From assembly GCA_964106915.2 (NCBI GenBank), contig OZ066918.1: a DNA stretch of 64,000 nt; one strand, written 5' to 3'. Of this stretch, positions 3,977 to 58,156 are shown piece after piece. The stretch comes from Podarcis gaigeae (Eukaryota). The translations under genes and the position numbers were made by a program. The stretch's first letter is position 1. The number at the start of each line of letters is the position of its first letter. Below the pieces are notes generated by a model. The model was given only the letters and a program-made list of their open reading frames with translations, was not told the DNA's origin and searched no databases.

Positions 3977-3988
3977 ATGGCAACCGAG
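3977..3988 (+). CDS. GOLGA7B: Golgin A7 family member B, coding exon 1 (MATE)
   Basis: aacATGG Kozak context, ATG GCA ACC GAG then gtgagc donor; matches the recalled GOLGA7B N-terminus [14 protein letters not shown]. Confidence 0.9.
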
Positions 3989-9521: not shown

Positions 9522-9647
9522 GTCCACAATCTCCAAGAACTACGGCGGAGTGCTTCCCTGGCCACCAAGGTCTTTGTTCAGCGGGACTACAGTGATGGGA
9601 CCATCTGCCAGTTCCAGACCAAATTCCCTCCAGAGCTGGACAGCCGG
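9522..9647 (+). CDS. GOLGA7B: GOLGA7B exon 2 ([42 protein letters not shown])
   Basis: ttccag acceptor, gtacag donor, 126 nt, phase 0-0; near-identical to recalled human GOLGA7B. Confidence 0.96.
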
Positions 9648-10093: not shown

Positions 10094-10246
10094 ATTGAGC
10101 GGCAACTTTTTGAAGAAACTGTGAAGACCCTCAACAACTTCTATGCGGAGGCTGAGAAAATAGGGGGCAGCTCCTACCTGGAGGGATGCCTGGCCTGTGC
10201 CACAGCCTACTTCATCTTCCTCTGCATGGAGACCCGCTATGAGAAG
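10094..10246 (+). CDS. GOLGA7B: GOLGA7B exon 3 ([51 protein letters not shown])
   Basis: aag acceptor after a polypyrimidine tract, gtttgg donor, 153 nt; contains the family's palmitoylated CLAC cysteines. Confidence 0.96.
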
Positions 10247-13249: not shown

Positions 13250-13351
13250 GTTCTGAAGAAGATCTCCAAGTACATCCAAGAGCAGAATGAGAAAATCTAT
13301 GCTCCTCGAGGGCTGTTGCTGACAGACCCAGTGGAACGGGGCATGCGAGTT
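13250..13351 (+). CDS. GOLGA7B: GOLGA7B exon 4 ([34 protein letters not shown])
   Basis: caccag acceptor, 102 nt, followed by GTATCCTTC; not in the ORF track because it is short. Confidence 0.96.
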
Positions 13352-13475: not shown

Positions 13476-14657
13476 CCATTTCCTGTGTCCCAGCTGAGAT
13501 TCTCTGCTCCAAATTCAGTTGTGGGATTGTGCTACTTAGTCTTCTTACTTATTTTACAGTGTTTGTTTACTGCTTTCTAAGCACAGTGGCTCAAAGCAGT
13601 TCCCAAAAATAAAATCAGATCTACAGGCAGATGATATTACTCTACACAGCAACAAATCTGGAGTCCCAAGTGCTATCAGTGATATTTCGAACAATAGCAT
13701 TGTGTGACTCTGCTCCCTTGACAAGAGTTTGGGGAAATGGGGCAATATAAGGCTGAAGTTTTTAGCAACATAGGAAACTGCCTTATATGAAGCCAGACCA
13801 TTGTCCCATCTTGCTCAGTACCACTGAGCTATGACCCTTCCTAACTGCTGCTCACTTTTCTGCTGCTCTCAGCAGATGGGATCAGCTGGTTTGAGGCACA
13901 GTGTGTGGACAGTGATGTCTAAAGTAACCCCCCCAATTCCCTTTGCTGGTCTTGCTGCCTCCCCAGGTTCACCACAGTGCCACAGGAAACGACCCTTGCT
14001 CCCAAAGGGGCTACCAGGCCTATGCTTAGCAGCCAGAGGTTTTTGGTCTTTGTGGAGGCAAGCTCCTTCACCAGAGGTTGTGTCCAGCTATTGCGGCTTC
14101 TGGCTCTGCTCCCTTGAAGGGATGTGGTGGCCAAGAAGAAGTGGGTACTGAAAGGCCCATGTTTTCCCTCCAACCCACCAAGCATTCCTGCTGCCTCTAG
14201 TGCTGCCAGGACTCACAGTTTCCTGAACTCGTCAGCAAAATGTATTTTAGCCTTCAAAAACACCAGCAAAACACCGTAGGGATTATAAAGGATGTGCTTG
14301 GGATGTGTTTGTTTAGAGCTTTAAAACTTTGCTCTTCAGATGAAAAAGGCTTGCAAAGACCAAAAATAAAACAGTCCCTGCCCTCGGGCTCACAATCTAG
14401 GGGACACAGCACAAAATGAGAGATTTGGGAGGGAAGAGGTAAAAGCAAACTCAGGTGCAAATTTTTAGTTACGAAGAACATCTCATAATGGAAGGCAGTA
14501 GCATATAGCTTTAGGGCTGTCCCTGCAATAGTGAGCATGCAATACATTCATGGGGCAACGGCTACTTTTGTGTAAGGAAAGATTAACTGTCTTATCATGT
14601 CAAAACAAAAAAAATTCCTTCCAGTAGCACCTTAAAGACCAACTAAGTTAGTTCTTG

Positions 14658-14695
14658 GTATGAGCTTTCGTGTGCATGCACACTTCTTCAGATAC
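14658..14695 (-). ncRNA. Minimal type I hammerhead ribozyme motif (Penelope-type)
   Basis: Minus strand reads GTAT-CTGAAGA-A-GTGTGCATGCACAC-GAAA-GC-TC-ATAC: CUGANGA and GAAA cores, stem II hairpin, palindromic AGCT stem III, stem I GTAT/ATAC. Confidence 0.7.
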
Positions 14696-14701
14696 ACACC
14701 T

Positions 14702-14739
14702 GTATCTGAAGAAGTGTGCATGCACAGGAAAGCTCATAC
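14702..14739 (+). ncRNA. Minimal hammerhead ribozyme motif, second copy (stem II closing pair mutated)
   Basis: GTAT-CTGAAGA-AGTGTGCATGCACAG-GAAA-GCTC-ATAC; C>G at 14727 breaks the base of stem II. Confidence 0.55.
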
Positions 14740-15602
14740 CAAGAACTAACTTAGTTGGTCTTTAAGGTGCTACTGGAAGGATTTTTTTGTGTTTTGACTA
14801 TGGCAGACCAACATGGCTACCTATCTGTAACTGTCTTATCATGTGCCTGCTTACTCTCTCAAACATAAGTTTCACTTAGTTCAGTAATACTTATTCCCAA
14901 GTTAATAAAGCATTGCACATTTTCAACTATTTGGCTTAGATAAGTGGTGGTTAAGGAGTGGAAGTAGACAGATATGAAACTATGACTATGGAGCAACCTT
15001 CTTTCACCTTCTGTGTGATATCATACAGCAGGAATGGAAAACCTGTCACCCCACAGATGTTCTTAGGTTCCAGCTCCCATCAACGCCAACTAACTTGGTT
15101 GGCCAGTAGTCTGGGATTATGGGATGGAACCAACAGATTAAGGGCACGTCCATACTTCTGCTTGTCATGCCACTTTCCCTGGGGTAATGCAGCTCTTTAC
15201 CGCTGAATCGGAGCAAATGTCAATTGGGTTTTCCATGGACTGACACTTGCTCCAATTCAGCAGTAAAGAGCGGGTTTTCCTGGGAAAAGAGGTGGGGCAA
15301 ACAGAAAACCTCTGGGACCTGTTCTTTCTAGGTGAGGGATAAGTGGAAGTGAGCAGAAGCTCCAACAACACAGGATGTCAACCCCTTCTGTAGAAGAAGG
15401 CACCTGATGTCAGAGAAAAACAGATGAGGCATATTTTTACCCAGTGCATAGTTGACTTGTGGAAGCACAACAACATGTATTTGAGACAGAGCAACTGCCT
15501 GAAAGGTGCGCTGTCATTTCATACTTCAGCTGCACATGCCAAACTGTCTGAGGTTGGAACAGTCAGAAACTTGCTCTTACCAGATAAGCTGAAGTCTTAC
15601 AA

Positions 15603-15900
15603 CAGGGGTGAGGAAACGTCTTCAGTCTGAGGCCTCGTTTCCTCGTGAGGAACCTCCCAAGGGCTACTTGCTAGTGGTGGGTGATGCCAGAGGCAAAGCT
15701 GGGTGAAAGATCAGATGGGACTCTTCCAGCATAAATCAGAAGTTTATATACATACATCTGTCCAGCCAGGCAGAAGAACTCAAGGTGGGCATACAGCAAG
15801 ATTGTCCCAGGAGAGGCATGGCCTAGGGAGTTTCCTAAAGGCTGGATGGAGAGATCTGGAGGGACACAGTTGGCCCCTGGGCTGGAGGTTCCCCACCCTG
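15603..15900. mobile_element. Degraded non-autonomous hAT element
   Basis: Ends CAGGGGTGAGGAAAC / GGTTCCCCACCCTG; imperfect 8-bp TSD TCTTACAA / TCCTACAG. Confidence 0.6.
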
Positions 15901-16008
15901 TCCTACAGCATTGTCAAGCTCTTTGTGCATTTGTGGCTGCTGAACAGGGGTGCGCAAGGCTACTAGCTCTCCTTGTTCCCTGTGTCCTCCTTATCCTCTT
16001 GCCCACAG

Positions 16009-16116
16009 ATCGAGATCTCCATCTATGAGGATCGTTGCAGCAGTTCCAGCTCTGGCAGCTCAAGCAGCAGCAACAGCAGTGCTGGTGGCGGGGGTGGGGG
16101 AGCCGGGGGCCGGTGA
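16009..16116 (+). CDS. GOLGA7B: GOLGA7B exon 5 to first stop (IEISIYEDRCSSSSSGSSSSNSSAGGGGGGAGGR*)
   Basis: cccacag acceptor; Ser/Gly-rich tail typical of GOLGA7B; TGA at 16114-16116; total CDS 166 aa. Confidence 0.95.
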   Translation: MEISIYEDRCSSSSSGSSSSSNSSAGGGGGGAGGR

Positions 16117-16206
16117 CTGGCACAGAGTCCCGGCAGGGATTTGTACTGCCGGGACGACGGTGTCTCCGAGATCCGCAGACTGCGCTACCAGAGCACCCGC
16201 TTCTGA
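16117..16206 (+). CDS. GOLGA7B: Putative stop-codon-readthrough extension of GOLGA7B (X-LAQSPGRDLYCRDDGVSEIRRLRYQSTRF*)
   Basis: In frame after TGA-CTG, 29 sense codons to a second TGA at 16204-16206; ends in a class I PDZ motif; 8 CpGs in 87 nt versus 2 in the next ~94 nt. Confidence 0.6.
   Translation: MAQSPGRDLYCRDDGVSEIRRLRYQSTRF
16119..16164 (+). promoter_or_regulatory. RNA stem-loop 3' of the GOLGA7B stop codon (candidate readthrough stimulator)
   Basis: GTCCCGGCAG (16127-16136) is the exact reverse complement of CTGCCGGGAC (16146-16155) with a 9-nt loop; extendable by GGCAC (16119-16123) pairing with GTGTC (16160-16164). Confidence 0.65.
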
Positions 16207-18048
16207 GCAGCCCCAGGGGGGTTGGGGTGCCGGCAAGGAGGGTTGGGGCACCCCTGGGGAGGGGCTTGTGACAACCAGCGGGGGGCAAAGTCCTTGTAAG
16301 AGGATGCTTGGCCTCAGCCCCAAATGAGCCCAGTCTCTCCATGGCTCAGAACCTGGATAACCTGAATTGACACTTCCTGCGGGCTCCTGGGGACACTCCT
16401 GCCCACCCCCTCCCTGGGATGTCCAAATGTGTCATTCTCCAAGTCCTGTCCTCACAAGCTGCAGGTACACAAATACACCGTCCGAATGCACCCTCTTGCT
16501 CAAGGTCAAATGACCAGTAAAGACCAGCCCAGCATGGTGAGGTGGGGTGGGGTGGGGTGGAGTGTGGGTGAGGGAACTGGTGGTTTTGGGACCCTGTGAC
16601 AAGCCTTTCCCTGAGCACCACTGTCCTCTCCCCTCCTGCATTGGCACTGACCCCCCATCCTAGCTCCTGTCTTTTGCTTGCTGCTGTGCATGCCATTCTC
16701 CTGGCACTTTAGGCATGGTCTGAGCATCCAACATCCACAGTGCTGTGATGGGGCCCCTGCAAGTGCTTTGCCCACCTTCCCCTCCCTCCTGCAGGGTGCT
16801 GGTACTGGCAGAGACATGCCCTCTCACAGATTCCAGGATGGACTCTGTACTAGGGCACATGCCTCTTGCGCTGGATCCTTCTGAGGTAACAGAGGGACAG
16901 GGGCATTGTAAGGAGCCACAGGAGGATGTGAGGCAGCAGCACTGCCCCCCTCTGGTGGGATAGCAGCACGGATCCTGTCGAGAACTATAGAGTCTTCCAA
17001 AGTTGAAAGACTGCACCTTGCCACCTCTGACCAGGTGCAACAGGTTTTCCAGTTCAACGAGGGATCACGGAGAGCATCAGAAGATGGGAGATGTTGGAGG
17101 TGCTTTAGTGGAGAGGCCTCTGGCTCCTCAATTCCTCAGCTCATCCCAGTCCAATAAGCATCTTTGGGATTATGTATGTAAATATTTAATATAGCCCTGG
17201 CTACCAAAGCTCCACCCCTCCCTTCACCCTTACACCACATTTGGCAAACAGAAGAAAGAGGAAGGAGGATGAAAATTCCGAGGTGGGTATGGAACCCTGC
17301 AATATTTGACCCACTTCCCTAGAGCACAGGTGTTTTGCAGCATCACCTTATCACTTGCATGCACAAGTTGTCTCCTTGCTGCATGCTCCCTCTCCCTCCT
17401 TCCTGTAAATAGCTTCCTGGGCCCCCCCTATGTATGTTTGAGACCCTTTTGGTTCTGGAGCTTCAGTACCTCTTCTCTGAGTCCCCAGTGCCATTCTGTG
17501 AAACGAGATGGGAAGGCAAGGGGGAGACGACTGAGCCACTGGGTCAGTGGTCTGGGCCCCCCCAATGTACAGGTGTCCAAGCCATGGGCAAAGCCTGCCA
17601 CCGCTTCTGGCAATGGACAGCAGCTCCAAAAATGCTTCCAGCTTCTCACACACCACCCGTCCCATGCACAGGTAGATGTCCTTGTGGGGGTGGGGGTCAC
17701 TCAGTATAAGACTTTGTTTGCACCCAGCTGTGGAGGGGGAGATTGTTGGAGGGTAGACACCAGGCTGTTTTGGATGCTTGGCCTGGGCAAACTCAGCAGT
17801 CACTCCACTACTTCGTTAGTGCTCCAAACTTCTTGATTTCAGAATGGGATTTCCTCCTTTTTGATGGTGGGGAAGAATGTGTTTGGCTGCAGAGGGCATC
17901 ACAAATGCATAGAGGTTAAGCCAATGGGACCCTGGGAGGGTTTTCCCCTGTACCCAGATGCCCTGAGAAGCTGCTCCCCATGCCATATATTGGACTCATG
18001 GATCTGGTCATAGTTGTATCCCTCTGACTCTACATGAAAACTTCTGAC

Positions 18049-18108
18049 AATAAACTAGAAGTGAGAATCTACCAGTGTTGCTTTCTTCCTATCCATTCTC
18101 TTAATAAA
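18049..18108 (+). terminator. Candidate GOLGA7B polyadenylation signals
   Basis: AATAAA at 18049-18054 and 18103-18108, where the GC-rich 3' UTR-like sequence ends. Confidence 0.5.
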
Positions 18109-18909
18109 TAATAGACCTGGCTCCCACACATATATTTCATTCACAGCCACCCATGCTGTTGTCTTAAGGCTGCATAACCCATTAGTAGCAATGATTCCCA
18201 TGAATTAAAATATAAAAGTATAGTATGCATTGCCTGGATGATCAAGAACTATCAGCAGGCTTACACTTTTAGGCTTACGCTTTAATTGGACCTTTATTCA
18301 TATGCTTGATTATAGAGCCACTGATGCATGGTTGAAGTATGCATTTAACATTTAATTGATGCTAACACTGCTCTTGAAACAAACAAGACAGATGCTGGAA
18401 TCATGATTGCACCAGAGATTTTGCTGGTTTCGTATGCACTATGCAGATTCACCTGTTTCGTTTGAAGATATCAATGGAGCTGATATGCAGCTGACCTGCT
18501 GCCTGGCTTGGTGGTACTCATACACAGGTAGGTCTGCAGGCAATTGCTCTAAGTCTAAAGCTAGCAAATGAGCTTCAAGAGAGACAGGTTTTCACATGCA
18601 GATTGTCTCACCGATGTGAACTATGCAAAGAAACAAAGTGGGTTTGTGTAAAAGGCCCTGTACCCTTCCAGCACTCAGAGCTTTGCCCTTGACAGAGATG
18701 ACCATGTTAACCAAAGTTAGTTTGGATGAATGTGGGAATTATCCTATAACTTCTGTGAATTTAAAAAAATGTGAACCGTCAGAAGACCTCAGACATTTCC
18801 CCCCAAAAACAAACCAGAGGACTCAGAAAATAGTATTTGTTCACCTCCCCAGAAACTGTCCTCCATCAGCCTCTTCCCCCCAAACAAATTTCCCCTTTCT
18901 TTCCCTTTA

Positions 18910-19098
18910 GGAACATTGGAATCTGCCTTATTTTGAGCCAAGCCACTGGTCTATGTAGCTCACTATTGCCCACACTGGCTGGCAGCAGCTCTTTAGGGTT
19001 TCTGGCAGGAGACTCTCCCGGTGTTACCTGGAGATTCTGTGGATCGAACCCGAGACCTTCTGCTTCCAAGGCACATGCTCTATCACTGAGCTATCCCC
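18910..19098 (-). mobile_element. Squam3-like tRNA SINE
   Basis: Tail aggaacattggaatctgccttat through head ggatcgaacccgagaccttctgc...ctctatcactgagctat; a second partial copy lies head-to-head at about 19120-19240 (+). Confidence 0.65.
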
Positions 19099-19764
19099 AA
19101 GCCAGGTGTCATCTTTTGATGGGGAAGAGCCACAGGTCCATGGCAGAGCATCTGATTTGCTTGGAGAAGGTCCCCAGTTCAAGCCGCAGCACTTTCAGGT
19201 AGGGCTGGGAACACACACCCTTCACCTGAACCCTGGAAAAGGGGAGTAAAATAAATTTTAAAACATTTATCTGTCGGTATAGCCCATTAGGAAGTATCAA
19301 AATTCAAACCCACAATGTTCAAAACAGCCAGAAAATTTTGTATACTTCTGGGATATTTCTTTGCATTTCATCTTTGCTTGTATAAGCAATAGAACAGTGC
19401 CAATCTGCTGCAAAAGAATCTTTATACTTCTTTAGATTATTCATTAATTTATCCACCCAAGTGACTCGCCAGCCCATCTTATACCAATTAGCTTCTGAGG
19501 CACTCTTTCAGTCCATTGAGCAACAACTTGCCACACAGCAGCAAGAATCTATCCAATTAAAGGTTTGGAATAGCCACCCCCATTGTTGTTTTGAAGAGAA
19601 AAACAAGTTTTACAGGACCAATTCTGGAGATTTCATCACTTACTGTCCAGTCATTTCAGGAATTTCTGCAAAGATCACAATCCAAAACTGCAACACATTT
19701 TCACAAGTCTACCACATATGCTGGAATGACGTTTGTATATCCTCTCTAACACAGTTTCAGTTAG

Positions 19765-20753
19765 TATCATGGACTGGCTGGAGGCAGAGTAATGGGAGGC
19801 ACCAGCTGGGGAATCCCCAAGGGAACCCCCAGCGGAAGAAGGCGCAAAGCCAGGGGACTGGTGGTGGTCAGAGGGAAAAAAGGGAGCAGACTGAAGGGAG
19901 GGGGCATCGGAAGCTGAAAGGGTCAGAGGCTTTAGTGAGCAGGAGGAGGCTGTGGCAGAGAGCAGTCCAGAATCAGGCAGAGGCAAAGGCTGGAGAGGAG
20001 GGGAGCCAAGAGGCAGAGATCAGGCAGGCTGCTGCAGAAAGCCAGGGAGTCTCTGTCAGTATATGGAAACATCGCAGCTGCAAACAGCCAGATTGTTGAC
20101 ATCACATGATGCGCCTATCTGTGGGAAAGAAGAATTTCCCAGGAAGTTCACAGGCTTCTCAGAGCTTTGTGAAGAGTGCAATTTGAAACCTTCCATTTGC
20201 GCATGTTCAGGAAGTTTGTCTGACCTGCTAGAAGAACTGAACTGAAAGGACGTGTTTTTCTGTAGTGCTGTAATGTCAGAAATAAACATCATGTAAATAG
20301 ATTTCTGACTTATTTTCTTTCCCCTGCGGAAGCAGGAGGAGGGGGTGTGCATTTTACCCACGCTTGGCAAAATGTCGCCTATCAAAATCTCCCTGGTCTG
20401 TCTGGATGTCAGCCAGAGGAGGTTACCGGTATGCAAGCTCCGAGGACAGCGAGAGGGGCCAGCCTCTGTGGAGGGGGCTTGCAAACTAACAGTCTCCCCC
20501 TCCCTCCTGGTCTCCCAGAACCCATGGAGGTATGAAAAGGAGCCTAGACAGACACGGCAAAGAAGTTTCAGGTTGCATGGGAAGGAGACTTAGGGAGTCC
20601 TTGCAACTGCCTCAATGGGGCAAGATCTACTGAAAAGAGCTGCTGTGCTCACTGGGCCTGTCTTCCTGAGCTGTTTGTTTTTTTGTATAAAGAATTAACT
20701 TCACGGACGCCTTGTGAGTTATTGTTTATCTGCTCCCACCTCCCTCCTTGACT
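19765..20753. mobile_element. LTR-like element (probable Gypsy-type solo LTR) interrupted by a nested solo LTR
   Basis: Purine-rich body; degenerate TGTCA...TGACA ends (TATCA / TGACT); possible 5-bp TSD GTTAG / ATTAG. Confidence 0.5.
20054..20491. mobile_element. Solo LTR, 438 bp
   Basis: TG...CA ends with short inverted repeat TGTCAGT / ACTAACA; perfect 5-bp TSD GTCTC at 20049-20053 and 20492-20496. Confidence 0.75.
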
Positions 20754-22369
20754 ATTAGATATATTCATTTGAAACAGTCTCATACCATTTCTGCACATCT
20801 TTTCATGTTCGTTCCCTCATACTAGATGATGCTGATTTAATGGGCAGCTTTAACCACATAGAATTCCAATAACTGCCTTAAGTCTCTTTTCCACAGGCTA
20901 GTTGGTGTTAGGTGGCCTGGGAGTGGCAGTCCATCAGGAGTGTGAACCTGGCATTGCTCTCACTTGCTTTCCATGGATCATTTGGTGTCAAGGCTTATGT
21001 AGGCTGGCCTTCCCTGCCCACTGCTTGCTGGACTACAACTCCCATCAGCCCTAGCCAGCATGGCCAATGGTCAGGAATGATGGGAGTTATAGTGCAACAT
21101 CTTGAGGGCACTAGATCGGGGAAAACTGATGTGGATCTTCTGCTGTGCTAGGCCCCAGCCTCTCTGTGCCTTCACCAAGATCTCAGTTATTCAGAACTTA
21201 CAGCAGTGTAATAATACATATCAGAAAAGCATGTGAACTAAGCCAGATAAGAGTTTGGGGGCTTGTAACACTCACCTCTCATTTAAAGTGGGTTTTATGA
21301 GCCCCCAGAGTTCATTTCTGAGCCTGGTATGGCTCACGAGATCTTCACCAGCATCCCTAGTCCCTGGTGGCTCTTGCTTGTTCAAGTTTGTGCCAGACTT
21401 CCCTGACAGGTGATCAGCATGGCCAATGATCTACTTGCCTGGGAGCCAGAATTCTTAATCCAAGCTTTCCCTTTGCTCTGCCTCCACCCCCAAAAGCTGA
21501 TAGTTGGCATTATTAAATCTAGGAGCATTGACCACAGAGAATGTGTGCATAGGGATGCTCATTCATGGCCAACTGTAGCATGCAGGGGTATGGGGACTGG
21601 GACCAATACTGTGGCATGGATTGCAGCGATTCAGAGAAAACCTAAGTGTGAATTCTTTTTTTTTTTTTTTTACTTGAAATATTCTAACCGTGAGGTTGTA
21701 AAGCCCTACAGGTCTTCTGAAATTCATGTTTGTATCACAGCACCCTCAAGTGGTGAAGGATTTTAAGAGGCATAACCAGGGCTATACAGTATATATATAT
21801 ATATCAAATTCTAAAAGAGCACAGAATTCTGTACTGAGAACAGGATGTTTCATGTTAATCTCAGCTTTTGTGGTTTTTGAAAAATGAAGCCTCTAGCCCT
21901 TTTGGCTGTGAAGGTGTGCTGAAAAGCAACGTGGGCAATATCTGCTGAAATCTCAGGACCTGGAAAGGTAGCTGTATAAGTTTAGCAGCAGCAGAGGAAC
22001 AAGTCTTCCGTGTTCTTTGCCCTTCCCTTGACTAGCAAAGGCAGAATAAATTATGCAAAATATAAATAATTGAAGAATGAATTATGCAAAATAAGAGAAG
22101 TGTACACATTCCCCCAACTTGCATAATTTATATAGATTGCAGATTTCGGCATTGGCACTAAAAATATTTATTTATTCAGTACACCAAGTCCTTGCCATAA
22201 CCATGGATTATCTCCATGGAAAACCTTACATTATTTTAAATAACAGTAATAGCAATAATGTAGAACCACAGATTTCTACTTTTGAATGCCCAGTCTATGG
22301 ATGAATCTCTTTTCCACCATGTTGGACCATGTTTACACAAACAATTAGAAGGCATAATAGAATAGAGAC

Positions 22370-22482
22370 CCTTGATTCCAGGGTCGTGGGTTCAAACCCC
22401 ATGTTGGGCACAAGATTCTTGCATTGCAGGTGATTGGACTATATGTCTCTTGTGGTCCCTTTCAACTGTAGAATTCTACGAT
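22370..22482 (+). mobile_element. tRNA-Lys-derived SINE with CR1 tail (degraded)
   Basis: cagggtcgtgggttcaaaccccatgttgggca followed by a CR1 3' end (ttggacta...ggtccctttcaact...attcta). Confidence 0.65.
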
Positions 22483-23454
22483 CCTTGGAATATGGTGCAA
22501 CAATATCCTTTATTGTTTGATCAGTGATTCATCATGACACTGGTTGTTGGTCCAGTAGAAGGTCTCACTAATTCTGTGCCTCTGTTCCTGTGGGACCAAC
22601 ACAGCAATAAACACTGCACAATAAATGCTGTAAATCCATATCAACTGTATAAACTATGACAGGCTGTGTTTGTGTTCAGAACAGTATGAATGGATAACTA
22701 TTTTGTGTTGTGTTTTTAAAATGTGGTTCTATTAAAGGCCCACTCATCCCTTGATGAACGTAACATCAAGTGATGACTTCCACAGGTGAAACAGTCATCA
22801 CAGATCAACCACAGCAGACAGAACATTCAAACTACCTAATATAACCCTGGGCACAATATTTTTCACACATTTATCTGAGAGCAATGAAGTAATATCAGTG
22901 AGTGATGAACTATCAAATGATATATAAGGAAGTGTGAATCCATCCTATGAATCTCTTCCATCCATCTGATCACACAAATGAGCTGCCGGAAAGGTCAAGA
23001 CCCTTTGCCTCTGGGAAGTGGATACTCTTTAGTTTTATTGACTCTTGAGTCAGTGAGAGTTGTGCTTGCTATCGCCTTGTTTTACCTATCTTCCACATCA
23101 GCTTTATTTCCTTATTTCCCATCAACTTCCACAGAAGGCATCATCCTTTTCTATCTCCTAGAAAGACCAAACCTGATTTAGATAGCCCAATAGCCTGATC
23201 TGCTCTTCTGCAGCTACCAATGTACCTGGGGACCACGCTGATGAAGCACCAAAGGCTGGAGTCTAGGGTAAGGAGCGCCATTCAGTAACAGCTCATTGGA
23301 GTGTGCTTGTGTAAAAAAATGGCATCTGGCATTGCTTGTATGAATCTGAAGGAAGTGACCAAACACAGGCAGGTGCCTCAAAGGGGTTGTGTATAGTCCT
23401 GCTAACTTAGCCAGGAGTTTCTGCTAGACTCTGTCTTTATGCGTGGAATGAACT

Positions 23455-23600
23455 CTCTGGAAAGTGATAGACTCTCCTTCCTTGCAGATTTTTAAGCAGA
23501 TGTTGGGTGGCCATCTGTCATGGATGCCTTAGTAGATATTCCTGCATCGCAGGGAGTTGAACCTTCAGGGTCCCTTCCAACTCCATGGTCCTTGATTCTT
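23455..23600 (+). mobile_element. CR1 LINE 3' end fragment
   Basis: Similar to the 3' end of the CR1 copy at 53160-53308. Confidence 0.7.
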
Positions 23601-26426
23601 TGAGGCTTTAGCTCCTGTCTTTTTATTCCCCCTCCCCATAGGTCTTCAGAGCTAATGCTGTGGTGTTTAGTGCCATCAGCTGGGGGAAAGTATTCTGCAG
23701 TCCAAAGCATGCCTAGATGAGGAATATTCTACAGTGAAGAAGATGGCAGATATTAGGTAGGTATGAAGGTCCATTGCCTGGGAATCCAACACAATAAGAG
23801 GTGGGCAGGCCTGGGAACCATCACGTCCCTCAATTGCTGGCCTCTGTGTGTGTTAGCTGCAGAGTTGTTTGTGGAAGAAGCAGGGAATTATGGGAGTCAT
23901 GTACCCCTAGATCTTTAGGGAAAAGGAATGAATGTGGCACCACAGAGTCTAATTTTGATGCACTTGACTATGATGTAATCCAAACATTTCTGAATATACA
24001 TTACACCCTCCAGCAAATCATGTCAGGGGGGGGGATGTAACAGATGAGTTGGGAAGCTTGGGCTGACATAAGATAACAAATGGCCCTGTCATTTTGTAAA
24101 CACAGTGCAGGATTTGATGTTCAGGATGATTGTAAAATGCTAAATTAGAGATGTAAGATCATGTGACATCACTGAAATGGTATTAGCATCTTGAATCTGA
24201 TCTGAGGTGTGGACCAGGCTGCCTATTCCATAGACCTCCTCAGCTCAGTTGGCTGGCATAGATTTCATATGGTGACTAAAAGCAGTTTAGATCCAAGTGT
24301 TTGAGCTTAACTGGATTATGTATTTTGCTATTAGCAAACACAAATTATTTGTGTGATAATCACTGAACATTCCAGACACCGTGACAGTTTCTGCATAGGG
24401 GTCTGGAGATCTAGCAATACTATCTTAACCTTCCATGATGATTCACTGCCAGCCTTAAGCCTCTTGACAATCAGTTCCATATATATATCTCACAAAGCCA
24501 ACATCTGCAATAAGTAGGAAAATTGTGTTGGAAGCCTGGAAATCTGAGAAATGACAGAAGTGATGATGATACCAATGTACTAGATTAGCTATAAATTGAG
24601 ATAATTACATTATTCTTATCAGTTTTCACTCTTTCTAAGGTAAAATCATCTCAGTTGCAGCTAATGACAAACCTGTCTCCCTGCAGGCCACCTCTGTCAT
24701 TGACCTGGGGACACAGGAGCCCCATGATAGCCAGAAGGTGGGGAGTCCTACACCCCTCTTGCTTTCATAACCCACTCCATCACAGAACCTGTCCAATAAA
24801 AGCTTTGACTGATGTACACTTGTGTTTCTGTGCTAGTGAAGGCTAGTGAACAGGGATCTGTGTTTCCCATTTGTTTCTCAGCTGCGTTCATGATGAGCCA
24901 CCCCCTGCGGGGGGCTCAGGAGTTTTAGGGACTATTCCACTACCACACCCATATCAGGGCTCAGCGCCTGCATCTTATCCACCATCTGTCTGCTCTACCG
25001 CAGTCCCCCTAGTTACTGCTGGTGTGATAAATCATGCAGCTGGGCTGCATGGTGGTGAAAGATAAGGGGGTGGGGGGGGACATTGATATCATGGTCTGCT
25101 GGATTCTTAATCTGCAGACAGTGGCAATCAACCAAATGAACATGGGAGATGTAGCGGGATGAGATTAAGTGGGCTGGTAAAAATGACAGGCAGCCTAAAG
25201 CAGGTCAAAATCAGGCAAGTATCCAAAATGGGATATTGGTCCCTGCAGGGGTGGTGTCGGTGCTCACCATCCTTGGGCATCTTCCAGGGCCCTGGCAGGA
25301 CCCACTGCTGCCATCTGTTCTGGGCTCCACTTAGAAGAAATAATATGCACCCGCCACCCTCTAAGCAACCACCAATCCAAATTCCTACGGCGTTACTGGT
25401 GTAGCATCACTGCAGAGTATTGTGGGAAACGAAGAAGACAGGCTGCTTGCAACATTGCCATTCACTGCTGCAAACCAGGGCCCTGACTCTTCCCCAGCAA
25501 CTGATGCTTGTTTACCCAATAATAACTCCCTGAAGGATTCACCCTGGAGACTCACCTGTCAGAAAGTGCACAAAGGTGGGGGTTTTTAATACCCAAGGAA
25601 TTGTTCCGCATACGAGATGATGTGAACATCAAAACGTCTTATATAAACTACCCACTGCTGACTGGGTTTGTAGCAAGAAGTTGTGCCTTTCCTTTCCATT
25701 TGCGATAATTCGGCTTGTCTGCATTTGTATAAATATATCCATATTTAAGCAAACATACATTTTTAAATATAGATTGCTCTGCAGTAGATCCTGCAAATCA
25801 CCTGCTTCCGGCCTTATCTATTGATTAACTCGTTCACTACAGAAATATGCCAGAGCTGCCCAGAAAGAACTTGGAAGTTCTGGCTCCCATCAGTAACAAG
25901 GAGAGACTCCTCACCAAAGAGAAGATTTTTTTCCTGGTTGTGTGTGGCTCAAGCATCATTACTTGCCTGATTATAAAATAAGCAGTAATGTGATTGTAGC
26001 ATTTAAAGCTGGGATTTAAGCACAGCACTAACATTCAAGAGCCAATTTCCTTTCTAGCTCAACCTTTTAAAAAATGGGTTTTCCAGCAAACAAGTGGAGA
26101 TTGTTTTCTTGAGCTTGGTCTCCCAGGCGAAAGATTGTGACATTGTGATAAGTAGCCTGTCACAAGGTCAGCGTCACGTAGGAATTTTGTCTGAACGGTC
26201 CCTCAATAAATTCCACCTGCTCTGACTGCTGAAAGGTATCTCATACACCCTGCAGAGGACTGCTCTGTCACAAAACTCCTAGGTCAGTGATGGCGAACCT
26301 TTTAGAGACCGAGTGCCCAAACTGCAACCCAAAACCCACTTATTTATCGCAAAGTGCCAACATGGCAATTTAACCTGAACTGGTGCATAGTCTGCAGTAG
26401 CTGTCACTACTCTGACTCCTATTTAG

Positions 26427-27643: not shown

Positions 27644-27774
27644 TCAGTTCTTCACACAGCGCCGCCTGTCTGCCCCCAAGAAGAAGCCTTGCTGGCAGTG
27701 GCAATGGAAAGAGCCAGGCTCATTGTGGCAGATGTGATCACACGGGGCCGGTCTTTCTCTGCACTCATTTACAT
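27644..27774 (-). CDS. CRTAC1: CRTAC1 alternative terminal exon, calcium-binding EGF domain 3 (DVNECRERPAPCDHICHNEPGSFHCHCQQGFFLGADRRRCVKN*)
   Basis: tccttctgtttttcag acceptor, phase 1; D-x-N-E-C and C-x-N-x-x-G-S-F-x-C signatures, six cysteines, TGA at 27646-27644; absent from the ORF track. Confidence 0.8.
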
Positions 27775-28133
27775 CTGAAAAACAGAAGGAAGAGACATAT
27801 TTCACCCAGCGGGAGGAGCAGATGCCAGCGGGGATTTCAACGGAGTGCCCAACAGCAAGGATAACCAGCTCCTTGGAGCCTACTCCTTGCAGCTGAAAAA
27901 ATGAAAAAATGATGCCTGCAGCAAACTGTTACCCTACTCCCTACTGCAAGAGGTAGTCGCTGACCCAGCTCTTCCACAGTTTTGTGCCATGGAACACCTC
28001 AGAGAGACCTAGAAGAGGACATGCTATGGCAATGCCTGCCACCATGGAAGGTGTGGTGGTCTGGCTCATTGCTTGCAGACTTTTTGGAGCAACAGCTACT
28101 GGCCTGCTCAGCAGATACTGGCTACTATTTTTT

Positions 28134-28197: not shown

Positions 28198-28291
28198 CCC
28201 CAAAATGTATATACTAGTTGTTTGTACTAAAAGCTTGCAGTGGTTTACAAAAAGGATTAAAATATTAATAAAAGACAGTTTAAAAACTTAC

Positions 28292-28417
28292 CCAGGCACT
28301 TGTTGGCATCTTGGGGATCAGTCTTGAAGCCGGGGTGGCACTGGCAGGAATGCCCACCCTGTGTGTTGACACAGACGTGGCTGCAGTTATGCAGACCATA
28401 GGTGCACTCATTTATGT
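28292..28417 (-). CDS. CRTAC1: CRTAC1 alternative exon, calcium-binding EGF domain 2 (DINECTYGLHNCSHVCVNTQGGHSCQCHPGFKTDPQDANKCL)
   Basis: ctgcccag acceptor, G|gtaagt donor, 126 nt, phase 1-1 (compatible with exon 14); six-cysteine cbEGF pattern. Confidence 0.82.
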
Positions 28418-29562
28418 CTGGGCAGAGAGGAAGGATCATAGTGAGCGCAGCAGTGGTTAAGTGTTCCTGTTCACACACGTGTCTCCAACCTCATGAGGAG
28501 ACCTCATGGGCACCTCTCAGACAGCTATTACCACTGGGGGAAACATGGTTAGATTCCCATTCCTGATACCCTCAGGGTCAGCCTTGTAAAAAAGTGCCCA
28601 AAATTCCCATGACCATCACCAGCCCCAAATTGCTGGGTGGGGTGAGGTGGTGGTGGTGAAAACCTGGCCATGGCAACTAATTATGCAAACCTCATTGGGG
28701 CAGCAAACCTTTGTGACAGATGGCTCAGGTGGCACCCTATATTTAGCCATTTAGCAGGTAAGTGAAGCCTCGAAAGAGATTCAGAGGAAAGCCATTTTGC
28801 ACCTAGTGGACAGTGAAGCAGTTTTATCAAGAGCATGAACTGTGCTCTATTTCCAAGGAGATGATCTGAGAGACTATCCAGGCACCAGCACTTAGCAGGG
28901 GAAAGTGGTGTTTCCTCATGTCCACTACTCTGGTGTGGGGAAGCTTGCAATGATAGGCTTCTAGTTCTCTCTTTTTCTCCTCCAGAGGGCACCAGTGTCC
29001 TATCTGATTGTTGCCATCTGGATATGCAGCAAAGAAGCAAGAAAAGGCTTGGTCACTCCTTCAGGTTGTGCTCTCAAACTTATCTGACCAAGTGACATGT
29101 CTACTTATTAATTGATCAATGGAAACTCTATGGAACCAGAGCCCAGGTGTCCAGAGTATGTGACTTTCGCAACAGAGCAAGGGGGTGATGCAGCAGATCG
29201 GGATTCCAGCCTCTACTCCAGCTGTAGGTATCTCAGTGCCCCTGCTGGGTCAGGTGCACGGAAAACAAGAGCCCCTCAAGAGTTCAGTTCCCTAGAACTA
29301 GGCAAGGCACACAATCCAGACACATAGCTCACGGAGGCACATAATACCCAAATACACATTTGAGCATATGGCAAAGAATGATAAGGTGTGACATGGCCAA
29401 CACTTATCAGCACCCTTGTGTGGCACATCAACGTTCACTCACATTTCTGGTTCATTCAGGCATACACTTGTGAACATGTGACTCACACGGCATATATGTG
29501 GACATTGTATTGCCACTGTTTATCCCCTGAGTCTGCTTCCAATCAAACTATCATGGGATCTA

Positions 29563-33895: not shown

Positions 33896-34014
33896 TTAAA
33901 GTGCATAGGAGTGAAAGCAGAGTCCGAGGCAAAGTGGAAGCAGAGGGGCAGAGGGCAAGATGGGGCCCAGCCAGCTCCCTGAGGAAGGGTATCCACCAAA
34001 AAAGGCCACTTGAG
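33896..34014 (-). CDS. CRTAC1: CRTAC1 B-type (LOTUS) terminal exon (AQVAFFGGYPSSGSWLGPILPSAPLLPLCLGLCFHSYAL*)
   Basis: ctgtgcag acceptor after a pyrimidine tract, phase 1; resembles the recalled CRTAC1-B tail AQVAFLGGYSS...LGLCLQLYAL. Confidence 0.88.
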
Positions 34015-34635
34015 CTGCACAGAGAGGGAAACAGAAAGAGAGACAGAGAGAAGGAAAGAGAAAGACAAGGCAAGAGTTAGTGGCGGTTGGCAAAGAAGGA
34101 GGTCTTCAGGGGCTAAACCAAATGTTTGCTGCCTGACAAGGGCCTGGTAACCCTACCTACAGAGTAAAAGCAACATACCGAGGAAAGCAACAGGTGTTGG
34201 GGGGGGTAAGCACCCATTTCCACAAGTCCCTACAAATCGCACTCTTTGCCCACTGCTTTGCAGCTGTTCAGCAACTATTATGCTTTTCCAGACCCATGCC
34301 TGATGCCAGATGCCTTATTTGGCCCGAAGGTATACTTTACCGCTTCTCCTCCCTTGCTCAGGCATCCTAACACGGCATACAAAGCAGGCGCTACAGTGGC
34401 CCCCACCCCATGCCATTTTCTCATTGGCCAACGTACAGAGATCATGATTCCAAGCTCGGGACCTCACTGGCTTCACTGCTTTCCCTTGCTCCTTCCCTTC
34501 TTGGGATTATGAAATAAAGAAATCCCAGCCTCCGGTAAACTTTCCACTGCTCGGGTGGCTTCAAGGGAGGGCTCAGCCCCTGTGGGGAGCGCCTTTCTCT
34601 CTCCCTCCCTCTGCTCTGCCAAAGCCATCACTCAC

Positions 34636-34779
34636 CAACGCAAGCTGTGCCGTCCTCGTTGGGCTCAAAGCCGCGATTGCAGCGCTTGTTGCTGCGGCAA
34701 CGGTACCCGCCATATGTGTTGATGCAGATGGGCCTGCCCCTGGGGCAGACAAAGGGGAATTCTGCACACTCATCCATAT
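34636..34779 (-). CDS. CRTAC1: CRTAC1 exon 14, calcium-binding EGF domain 1 (DMDECAEFPFVCPRGRPICINTYGGYRCRSNKRCNRGFEPNEDGTACV)
   Basis: ttctcag / gtgagt, 144 nt, phase 1-1. Confidence 0.95.
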
Positions 34780-35047
34780 CTGAGAAAAGGGGGCAGAGGG
34801 CGGGTGGAGGGAGGGAGGGGGTAAAGAGAGAGAAAGAGTGTGTGACGGAGGCCCAGGACAGGACAGAATCTAACAACAGCCTCTTAACACCACGGTTGGG
34901 CTGTTGCTTTATCCCCAGAGACTACCGCTGTGTGGCTGTGGACGGCTGCCACAAAGAGCCCGCCTTGTGCCCCATTGAGCCCAGTTGTGGGTAGAGGAAA
35001 TTGCACCTGAGCACCATTCACTGAGCTGCCCCTTGCAGGTGACTCAC

Positions 35048-38241: not shown

Positions 38242-38402
38242 NNNNNNNNNNNNNNNNNNNNNNNNNNNNNNNNNNNNNNNNNNNNNNNNNNNNNNNNNNN
38301 NNNNNNNNNNNNNNNNNNNNNNNNNNNNNNNNNNNNNNNNNNNNNNNNNNNNNNNNNNNNNNNNNNNNNNNNNNNNNNNNNNNNNNNNNNNNNNNNNNNN
38401 NN
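38242..38402. other. Assembly gap (161 N) in CRTAC1 intron 11
   Basis: Run of N; exon phases either side are continuous, so no constitutive exon is missing. Confidence 0.98.
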
Positions 38403-57668: not shown

Positions 57669-57953
57669 CTCTAGAACAAAGGGGAGGTTGAGGACACCAA
57701 ATGACACCAAGCCCACACTTGCCTCCAGCCTAGAATCTCCACAATAACCCAGAAAGACAGGCCATCTCCCCACCCCACTGCCTGACACATGTCAAAGATG
57801 CATGTATACCTAGCCTAGACTTGTGAATGTGTATGTGAACCTGCCTAGACCTGCATCATGTCAAAGCTCACCCCAACCATGGCACCCTCTTTCCTGGCAG
57901 CCATCTCCATTCTCATACCTCTTACAGCACCCAGTATTATCCATGGTACCCAC

Positions 57954-58156
57954 CCAGCCACGATGATCTCAAAGTCTCCATCCTGGTCCACATCAGTCAC
58001 GGCCACACCATAATTGAGCTGGGTCGGATTGCTGTCATAGTCAGGCGGGAGGATCTGATCCGTGATGGCTGTGAACATGGGCTCGCTTCGCTGAGATCCT
58101 TCACCAGGCCAAGCCAGGACCAAGCTCCACAACAATAACAGCCGCCACTTTGACAT
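57954..58156 (-). CDS. CRTAC1: CRTAC1 exon 2: signal peptide and start of FG-GAP region (MSKWRLLLLWSLVLAWPGEGSQRSEPMFTAITDQILPPDYDSNPTQLNYGVAVTDVDQDGDFEIIVAG)
   Basis: cttgtag acceptor directly before ATG, gtgggt donor, 203 nt; matches recalled CRTAC1. From this ATG the B isoform is 635 aa and the three-EGF isoform 681 aa. Confidence 0.97.

What the first reader, a model, noticed from the sequence alone, without database searches (positions are those of the whole stretch)
16114..16206. Candidate programmed stop-codon readthrough of GOLGA7B giving a PDZ-ligand isoform
Seen in sequence: the stop is TGA followed by CTG G. After a 10-nt spacer there is a perfect 10-bp GC-rich stem (GTCCCGGCAG / CTGCCGGGAC, 9-nt loop), extendable by 5 more pairs. 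The frame stays open for 29 codons (LAQSPGRDLYCRDDGVSEIRRLRYQSTRF) to a second TGA, and CpG density drops after it (8 in 87 nt, then 2 in about 94 nt). Established: UGA-C, especially UGA-CUA(G), is the leakiest stop context; 3' stem-loops about 8-12 nt downstream stimulate readthrough (alphaviruses, Drosophila headcase, the SELENON SRE); -S/T-x-hydrophobic-COOH is a class I PDZ ligand, and -TRF resembles the NHERF-binding -TRL of CFTR; GOLGA7B is an accessory subunit of the palmitoyltransferase ZDHHC5. Inference: a 196-aa isoform could dock a palmitoylation complex onto PDZ scaffolds. The recalled human CRTAC1-A peptide GTLGQSP is antisense to this site and implies a similar TGA-CTG context in human. 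I do not recall this being described, but cannot check the literature.
Basis: partly seen in the sequence, partly recalled or inferred. Interest (0 to 1): 0.92.

Follow-up and report, generated by a model that had tools for sequence, protein, structure and literature searches.

The report
Conserved readthrough extension of GOLGA7B
The 29 codons after the stop codon of the lizard GOLGA7B gene have been kept as protein-coding sequence from paddlefish to mammals, so ribosomes most likely read through that stop and make a longer, apparently undescribed form of this palmitoylation cofactor.

Summary
The window comes from a lacertid lizard. GOLGA7B exon 5 ends at TGA 16114-16116, followed by CTGG, 29 open codons and a second TGA at 16204-16206.

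In one sequence this is weak: an open run of 29 codons has P about 0.4.
- Cobra, ostrich, sea turtle, bat, woodrat, a salamander-like transcript and paddlefish all have TGA-CTGG, exactly 29 codons without indels, a second stop, and a tail ending -STRF.
- Alignment collapses right after the second stop.
- Substitutions show coding periodicity (33/17/53 by codon position). ML omega is 0.15 (LRT p about 1e-13). Lizard versus cobra shows 9 synonymous and 0 non-synonymous changes.
- A teleost copy and a shark lack both the extension and the CTGG context.

Rivals fare poorly. No SECIS was found. Transcript contigs show no splice that bypasses the stop. The antisense CRTAC1-A exon covers only 7 codons and is absent in squamates.

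The PDZ-ligand idea fits the invariant T-R-F end but is untested. No translation data exist. I found no paper describing this.

Verdict: strong candidate for functional stop-codon readthrough, a new member of a known kind.

The parts
3977..3988 (+). GOLGA7B coding exon 1 (MATE)
   Evidence: ATG followed by a GT donor; matches the N-terminus of squamate GOLGA7B proteins
9522..9647 (+). GOLGA7B coding exon 2
   Evidence: AG/GT borders; Pfam Erf4
10094..10246 (+). GOLGA7B coding exon 3
   Evidence: AG/GT borders; Erf4; 293 GOLGA7B-family hits
13250..13351 (+). GOLGA7B coding exon 4 (end of the Erf4 domain)
   Evidence: the splice joint 13351->16009 is seen in RNA of a related lacertid
16009..16113 (+). 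GOLGA7B coding exon 5: IEISIYEDRC followed by a Ser/Gly-rich linker of variable length
   Evidence: orthologues
16114..16116 (+). First stop, UGA, proposed to be read through
   Evidence: TGA in all 8 lineages that have the extension
16117..16120 (+). CUGG context directly 3' of the stop
   Evidence: TGACTGG is invariant in alignment A1. The first Leu codon has 0 changes although Leu is six-fold degenerate. Species without the extension have CCGC or CATC instead
16117..16203 (+). 29-codon readthrough extension
   Evidence: No indels or stops in 8 lineages; pN/pS 0.41 in this frame only; ML omega 0.15, LRT 55; Fitch changes by codon position 33/17/53
16192..16203 (+). Invariant C-terminal S-T-R-F, fitting the class I PDZ-ligand pattern S/T-x-hydrophobic-COOH
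   Evidence: Identical residues in all 8 lineages despite synonymous codon changes
16204..16206 (+). Second stop (TGA here, TAA in the salamander-like transcript)
   Evidence: alignment breaks down just after it
16127..16155 (+). Squamate-specific 10-bp hairpin (arms 16127-16136 and 16146-16155)
   Evidence: z -4.0 in the window and -2.8 in cobra; other species -0.06 to -1.9. 82.5% of cells paired across species
16117..16152 (+). Shared alternative fold: outer stem 16117-16123 with 16146-16152, inner hairpin 16127-16131 with 16136-16140
   Evidence: RNAalifold; 89.6% of cells paired; one compensatory pair, A-U to C-G in mammals
16207..18065 (+). Remaining GOLGA7B 3' UTR
   Evidence: A transcript contig runs continuously from 16009 to about 18065, and the stranded reads indicate RNA from the + strand under the usual library convention
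16063..16137 (-). Antisense open frame corresponding to the therian CRTAC1-A last coding exon. In this lizard it lacks the AG acceptor and is cut short by a stop at 16060-16062

Best explanation
GOLGA7B mRNA carries a functional, evolutionarily maintained stop-codon readthrough site. A fraction of ribosomes decode the UGA at 16114-16116 with a near-cognate tRNA instead of terminating. This is helped by the invariant UGA-CUGG context and possibly by local RNA pairing. These ribosomes add one residue plus 29 more and stop at 16204-16206. The product would be about 196 aa instead of 166. A conserved peptide ending in S-T-R-F-COOH would then hang from the Erf4 domain through the Ser/Gly-rich linker encoded by exon 5. 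Shown here: the anatomy, protein-level purifying selection on the extension in its own frame, conservation of the stop and its context, and the continuity of the mRNA. Inferred: that readthrough is the route of translation, its efficiency, and that the new C-terminus acts as a docking motif (PDZ class I is the simplest reading).
For: Seven further lineages have TGA-CTGG, exactly 29 codons and a second stop: cobra, ostrich, sea turtle, bat, woodrat, a salamander-like spliced transcript and paddlefish. Alignment A1 is gap-free between the two stops and falls apart just after the second. Identity in the extension (0.60-0.90) exceeds that of the last 87 nt of the annotated CDS and of the next 87 nt in every pair tested. 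Only the sense frame 0 combines zero stops with a low pN/pS of 0.41; the other five frames give 0.55-2.0 and/or contain stops. ML codon model: omega 0.151; LRT against omega = 1 is 55, p about 1e-13. Fitch changes by codon position are 33/17/53, or 23/9/43 in tetrapods, p about 8e-6. Lizard versus cobra: 9 synonymous and 0 non-synonymous differences, P about 2e-6. The extension and the CTGG context are lost together in the teleost Alosa (TGA CCGC, 5 codons) and in a shark (TGA CATC, unrelated tail). RNA of a related lacertid shows the exon 4-5 joint and one continuous transcript contig across the stop, the extension and the 3' UTR, with no joint that bypasses the stop. Three spliced amphibian transcript contigs carry the same arrangement. 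No SECIS-like element was found on either strand of 15900-24000, even at E up to 10. In a deep mutational scan, CU right after UGA is the feature shared by all variants that keep readthrough (10.64898/2026.07.14.738498).
Against: There is no direct evidence of translation: no Ribo-seq, mass spectrometry or reporter data. The context is CUGG, not the validated CUAG. In that scan 764 of 765 changes to the four bases reduced readthrough. The non-CUAG candidates SACM1L, ACP2 and BRI3BP gave under 1% in HEK-293T cells (PMC4132726). Raw RNA read depth at the stop was 0-3, so editing of the stop cannot be judged. One Gnomon model (ruff, P0038) reaches the same frame through a splice instead. The fold is not significantly stable outside squamates. 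Only eight lineages were compared, and the in-frame relation is inherited rather than independently re-derived.
Confidence: 0.7

Rival explanations
1. The extension is a real, selected coding sequence, but it is reached by alternative splicing that removes or bypasses the stop (an alternative 3' splice site or an exitron), not by readthrough.
For: The Gnomon protein P0038 of Calidris pugnax joins an intron-4 read-in to the extension two codons after its start and ends in the same -YQSTRF. AG dinucleotides occur within the first 10 nt after the stop in all species.
Against: Those AGs sit at different positions and in different phases in different lineages. The sequence upstream of them is the G/A-rich Ser/Gly coding run, which is a poor polypyrimidine tract. 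Lizard-relative and amphibian transcript contigs show only the canonical 13351->16009 joint and a continuous stop plus extension. This model also does not explain the invariance of TGACTGG or the conservation of codons 1-2.
Confidence: 0.12
2. A-to-I editing turns UGA into UGG (Trp) in part of the transcripts, so the extension is translated by ordinary decoding. The local hairpin or sense-antisense pairing with CRTAC1 RNA would provide the double strand.
For: The stop lies in a self-complementary region. In therians it is also overlapped by an antisense exon.
Against: All transcript contigs carry TGA. No antisense reads were seen at the locus in the lizard-relative RNA. The A of the UGA is unpaired in every predicted fold. 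This is not excluded, because raw read depth at the stop was 0-3.
Confidence: 0.05
3. The conservation comes from the other strand or from RNA-level constraint: the CRTAC1-A last coding exon with its splice signals, or a 3' UTR regulatory element. Under this view the coding look is incidental.
For: Therian CRTAC1-A C-termini (GTLGQSP...VLVDGDLDL) are the in-register antisense of GOLGA7B exon 5 plus the first 7 extension codons. The region can fold.
Against: The antisense exon covers only 7 of 29 codons. Its AG acceptor is missing in the window, cobra and woodrat, and the squamate antisense frame is truncated. All sauropsid and amphibian CRTAC1 proteins fetched are B-type. No CRTAC1 gene is called next to the paddlefish copy. 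The antisense in-register frame has stops in 2 of 8 lineages and pN/pS 0.95. The 3>1>2 periodicity and omega 0.15 are specific to the sense frame.
Confidence: 0.04
4. The UGA encodes selenocysteine, and the adjacent hairpin is a Sec redefinition element as in SELENON.
For: An invariant UGA followed by a conserved open frame and a nearby stem-loop.
Against: No SECIS match on either strand in 8.1 kb at E up to 10, and RNA evidence puts the 3' UTR end at about 18065. The residues flanking the UGA show no redox motif.
Confidence: 0.02

Closest known systems
SACM1L, ACP2 and BRI3BP: readthrough candidates defined by evolutionary signature (Loughran et al. 2014, PMC4132726)
   Same: A conserved UGA, a coding signature between the first and second stop, no CUAG motif, and for SACM1L and ACP2 a stem-loop a few nucleotides 3' of the stop.
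   Different: A different gene and the context CUGG. Here the strong hairpin is lineage-specific. Those three gave under 1% readthrough in HEK-293T cells; GOLGA7B has not been assayed.
UGA-CUAG readthrough genes AQP4, MAPK10, OPRK1, OPRL1, VDR, MDH1 and LDHB
   Same: UGA followed by CU, short C-terminal extensions conserved far beyond mammals, and extensions that change localisation or partner binding.
   Different: The third base after the stop is G, not A, which is a single-base departure from the core motif. Nearly all such changes lowered readthrough in the deep mutational scan.
Class I PDZ-binding C-termini (S/T-x-hydrophobic-COOH, for example CFTR -DTRL; my own knowledge)
   Same: An invariant T-R-F-COOH, preceded by Ser and a basic stretch, at the end of a flexible Ser/Gly linker.
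   Different: No binding partner is known or tested. Phe at the last position is a less common variant. The same tail also fits a 14-3-3 mode III motif next to an R-x-R signal (my own knowledge, untested).
SELENON-type Sec redefinition element
   Same: A UGA with a hairpin about 10 nt downstream.
   Different: No SECIS was found.

Membership tests
Functional stop-codon readthrough gene (comparative-genomics definition) | The first stop codon is conserved, typically as UGA | tested here: met
   TGA in 8 of 8 lineages with the extension
Functional stop-codon readthrough gene (comparative-genomics definition) | Protein-coding signature between the first and second stop, in frame with the CDS | tested here: met
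   omega 0.15 with LRT 55; changes by codon position 33/17/53; no indels; signal specific to this frame
Functional stop-codon readthrough gene (comparative-genomics definition) | Conservation ends at the second stop | tested here: met
Functional stop-codon readthrough gene (comparative-genomics definition) | Alternatives excluded: splicing, Sec, antisense coding, editing | tested here: inconclusive
   Sec and antisense coding are excluded. Splicing is unlikely but rests on contigs and thin read depth. Editing was not testable at depth 0-3
Functional stop-codon readthrough gene (comparative-genomics definition) | Direct evidence of translation past the stop | not testable with these tools
   No Ribo-seq, mass spectrometry or reporter data available
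UGA-CUAG readthrough motif class | CUAG immediately 3' of the UGA | tested here: not met
   CUGG, invariant across lineages; only the CU and the final G are shared
Structure-stimulated readthrough (3' stem-loop about 8-12 nt after the stop) | A stable structure at the right distance, conserved with covariation | tested here: inconclusive
   The 10-bp stem is strong only in squamates. A shared two-part fold has 89.6% of cells paired but only one compensatory pair
Class I PDZ ligand | C-terminal S/T-x-hydrophobic-COOH | tested here: met
   T-R-F-stop in 8 of 8 lineages
Class I PDZ ligand | Binding to a PDZ domain | not testable with these tools
   No partner known; complex prediction was not used because the extension alone is 29 aa and no vertebrate PDZ reference is available
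Selenoprotein | SECIS element in the 3' UTR | tested here: not met
CRTAC1-A antisense terminal exon (in this lizard) | AG acceptor and an open frame running through GOLGA7B exon 5 | tested here: not met
   The acceptor AG is CG, and the frame is stopped at 16060-16062

The most novel reading that the evidence does not exclude
GOLGA7B is an undescribed programmed-readthrough gene dating back at least to the common ancestor of ray-finned fishes and tetrapods. It uses a non-CUAG context (UGA-CUGG). Its 29-residue extension gives the ZDHHC5 accessory subunit a docking C-terminus (-STRF). In therian mammals the recoding site and extension start are at the same time the antisense coding sequence and splice acceptor of the CRTAC1-A terminal exon. 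One short stretch would then serve two proteins and a recoding signal.
Probability: 0.5. Interest if true: 0.85.

Novelty: new member of a known kind. Interest (0 to 1): 0.8.

Why it matters
Vertebrates have very few accepted cases of functional readthrough; GENCODE lists 14 human and 11 mouse genes (PMC7778937). The experimentally robust cases share UGA-CUAG. A deeply conserved case with a different context would widen the rules for vertebrate recoding. It would also add a hidden isoform to a brain-enriched regulator of palmitoylation. Because bat and woodrat keep the extension, the prediction should carry over to other mammals. It can be tested directly with reporters, ribosome profiling and a peptide pull-down. 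The antisense overlap with CRTAC1-A may explain why screens that discard regions overlapping other coding sequence could have missed it. That last point is my inference; I could not check it.

Tried and rejected
- **Selenocysteine:** an Rfam scan of 15900-24000 at E up to 10 gave no SECIS.
- **Antisense CRTAC1-A coding as the cause:** rejected for codons 8-29 and for squamates, woodrat and paddlefish.
not conserved in mammals or paddlefish.
- **Alligator sinensis locus L005:** exon 5 is not in the assembly, which has gaps. I left the gaps as they are.
- **Podarcis lilfordi and Neofelis proteins:** not on record for DNA look-up.
- **Literature:** no paper links GOLGA7B with readthrough or recoding. 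The tail peptide occurs in no paper. GOLGA7B is absent from the supplements of Loughran 2014, Loughran 2018, Jungreis 2016 and Schueren 2014. Rajput 2019 and Jungreis 2011 are not held. The GENCODE and RefSeq readthrough lists could not be inspected, so prior annotation is not excluded.
- **Already-annotated extended isoforms:** among 479 fetched proteins only the odd Gnomon model P0038 contains the tail.
- Exons and the extension were handled apart, by reference. I fetched and compared no human contig.
- **Earlier scan notes:** nothing relevant.

Full report
**What is there.** The window comes from a lacertid lizard. The peptide obtained by reading exon 4 on into its intron matches the Podarcis lilfordi GOLGA7B model almost exactly.

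GOLGA7B lies on the + strand in five coding exons: 3977-3988, 9522-9647, 10094-10246, 13250-13351 and 16009-16116. All have AG/GT borders and together hold 166 codons. Exons 2-4 carry the Pfam Erf4 domain.

Exon 5 encodes IEISIYEDRC, then a Ser/Gly-rich run, and ends at TGA 16114-16116.
- CTGG directly after the stop;
- a 10-nt spacer, then a perfect 10-bp stem (16127-16136 with 16146-16155) and a 9-nt loop;
- 29 open codons and a second TGA at 16204-16206;
- CpG counts of 8 in 87 nt, then 2 in 94 nt.

In this one sequence the open frame is unremarkable (P about 0.41). The hairpin is moderately unusual: z -4.0 in 57 nt and -2.2 in 93 nt.

**The other strand.** CRTAC1 runs on the minus strand. 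Its exon 1 lies in 57848-58156, an EGF_CA exon in 34631-34921, and the B-type last exon in 33899-34105.

An antisense open frame, 16063-16431, lies codon-for-codon in register with the GOLGA7B frame. This was the main rival: the region after the stop could look coding because it is coding on the other strand.

CRTAC1 proteins fetched through a representative show an A-type C-terminus (GTLGQSP...VLVDGDLDL) in seal, Myotis, deer and marsupials. That tail is the antisense of GOLGA7B exon 5 plus only the first 7 codons of the extension. Its acceptor is ccctgcag|GG on the minus strand.

In the window, in cobra and in woodrat that AG is CG. The squamate antisense frame is also cut by a stop at the Ser codon 16060-16062. 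All sauropsid and amphibian CRTAC1 proteins fetched are B-type. The antisense exon therefore cannot account for codons 8-29 anywhere, and for nothing at all in this lizard.

**Comparative test.** I fetched GOLGA7B loci exon by exon and by reference. The exons were not joined, and no protein read through the stop was submitted.
- **Lineages with the extension:** cobra (L012), ostrich (L001), two sea turtles (L002, L003), the bat Eptesicus (L004), the woodrat Neotoma (L013), three spliced transcript contigs of a salamander-like amphibian (L006-L008) and paddlefish (L009). All have TGA followed by CTGG, exactly 29 sense codons, a second stop (TAA in the amphibian) and a tail ending S-T-R-F.
- **Alignment:** A1 has no gap between the two stops and disintegrates right after the second.
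- **Identity:** the extension (0.60-0.90) is more conserved than both the last 87 nt of the annotated CDS and the following 87 nt in all seven pairs tested.
- **Frame specificity:** only sense frame 0 combines no stops with low pN/pS (0.41). The in-register antisense frame has stops in two lineages and pN/pS 0.95.
- **Codon periodicity:** parsimony changes by codon position are 33/17/53, or 23/9/43 in tetrapods, p about 8e-6.
- **Codon model:** on the species tree omega is 0.151. Fixing omega at 1 costs 27.5 log-likelihood units (LRT 55, p about 1e-13).
- **Closest pair:** lizard and cobra differ at 9 sites, all synonymous.
- **Deepest tetrapod pair:** the last seven codons differ between lizard and the amphibian transcript only by synonymous changes.
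- **Lineages without the extension:** the teleost Alosa golga7ba (TGA CCGC, 5 codons) and the shark Chiloscyllium (TGA CATC, unrelated 36-codon tail). The extension and the CTGG context are present or absent together.

The extension therefore dates at least to the common ancestor of ray-finned fishes and tetrapods, and was lost in at least one teleost copy.

**Other routes to the same frame.**
- **Selenocysteine:** no SECIS-like match on either strand of 15900-24000 at E up to 10.
- **Splicing:** stranded RNA reads and contigs from a related lacertid confirm the 13351->16009 joint. One contig runs continuously from 16009 to about 18065, the 3' UTR end. By the usual stranded-library convention the reads come from + strand RNA; none indicate the antisense strand, and no joint lands between the two stops. 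Read depth over the stop itself was only 0-3, so rare isoforms and A-to-I editing of the UGA remain open.
- **A conflicting gene model:** a Gnomon model from the ruff (P0038) reaches the extension by an odd splice two codons after its start. The candidate AGs differ in place and phase among lineages and follow a G/A-rich tract. I therefore rate splice bypass as unlikely but not excluded.

**How it probably works.** The seven bases TGACTGG are invariant. The Leu codon after the stop never changes, although other Leu codons in the extension do.

In a deep mutational scan of AQP4, MAPK10 and OPRK1, CU directly after UGA was common to every variant that kept readthrough, and almost any change to CUAG lowered it. 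In OPRL1 the C and the next three bases were all critical. UGA-CUGG is thus one base away from the validated motif, so modest basal readthrough is the expectation.

The shared fold is an outer stem that begins at the first base after the stop (16117-16123 with 16146-16152) plus a 5-bp inner hairpin. Across species 89.6% of cells are paired, against at most 52% in slid controls, with one compensatory change in mammals. Single-species z-scores outside squamates are not significant, and both arms are also coding. A structural stimulator is therefore possible but not shown.

**Function.** The Erf4 profile ends at exon 4. Exon 5 is a linker of variable length, and the conserved element lies beyond the stop. 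The same tail also fits a 14-3-3 mode III site next to an R-x-R signal (my own knowledge). Neither reading was tested.

**Novelty.** No paper in the searchable library links GOLGA7B with readthrough or recoding, and the tail peptide occurs in none. The gene is absent from the supplements of four key readthrough papers. GENCODE annotates 14 human readthrough genes, but I could not see the list, so prior annotation cannot be ruled out.

I class this as a new member of a known kind. It is closest to the signature-defined, non-CUAG candidates SACM1L, ACP2 and BRI3BP, which gave under 1% readthrough in HEK-293T cells.

**Limits.** Eight lineages were compared and there are no translation data. RNA depth at the stop was thin. 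The alligator locus had assembly gaps, which I did not fill. No human sequence was fetched or compared.

Noticed in passing
window 16063-16137 (-); L004 and L013 at the same place: In therian mammals the last coding exon of CRTAC1-A is the exact in-register antisense of GOLGA7B exon 5, its stop codon and the first 7 extension codons. The residue at extension position 6 tracks the antisense acceptor. Cys (TGC) goes with a CAG acceptor on the other strand in bat, ostrich, turtle and the salamander-like transcript. Gly (GGC) goes with no acceptor in squamates and woodrat.
   Followed up: partly
window 27647-27928 (-) and 28260-28490 (-): Two further calcium-binding EGF exons lie on the CRTAC1 strand, between the B-type last exon and GOLGA7B (Pfam EGF_CA, E about 2e-10 each). 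They fit the long 714-728-aa CRTAC1 isoforms annotated in birds and suggest a third type of C-terminal end in sauropsids.
   Followed up: partly
P0038 (Calidris pugnax GOLGA7B model): An automatic gene model already calls the last 27 codons of the extension as coding, reached through an intron-4 read-in and an unusual splice. This is probably an annotation artefact driven by the coding signal.
   Followed up: no
window 14583-14956: A highly repeated element lies in GOLGA7B intron 4. Contig depth is up to about 55,000, with many loose ends and strand-switch joints in the RNA runs.
   Followed up: no
window 19029-19098 (-) and 21026-21099: A tRNA-like match (31.9 bits, just above Rfam's cut-off), probably a tRNA-derived repeat. 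Also a palindromic hairpin that matches mir-5408 on both strands, well below the cut-off.
   Followed up: no
window 38242-38402: A run of 161 N (assembly gap) inside CRTAC1; left as it is.
   Followed up: no
L010/L011 (Alosa) and L014 (Chiloscyllium): The teleost golga7ba and the shark GOLGA7B-like genes keep TGA as the stop but have other contexts (CCGC, CATC) and no extension. No CRTAC1 gene is called beside the Alosa copy, which has an Ig-domain gene downstream instead.
   Followed up: partly
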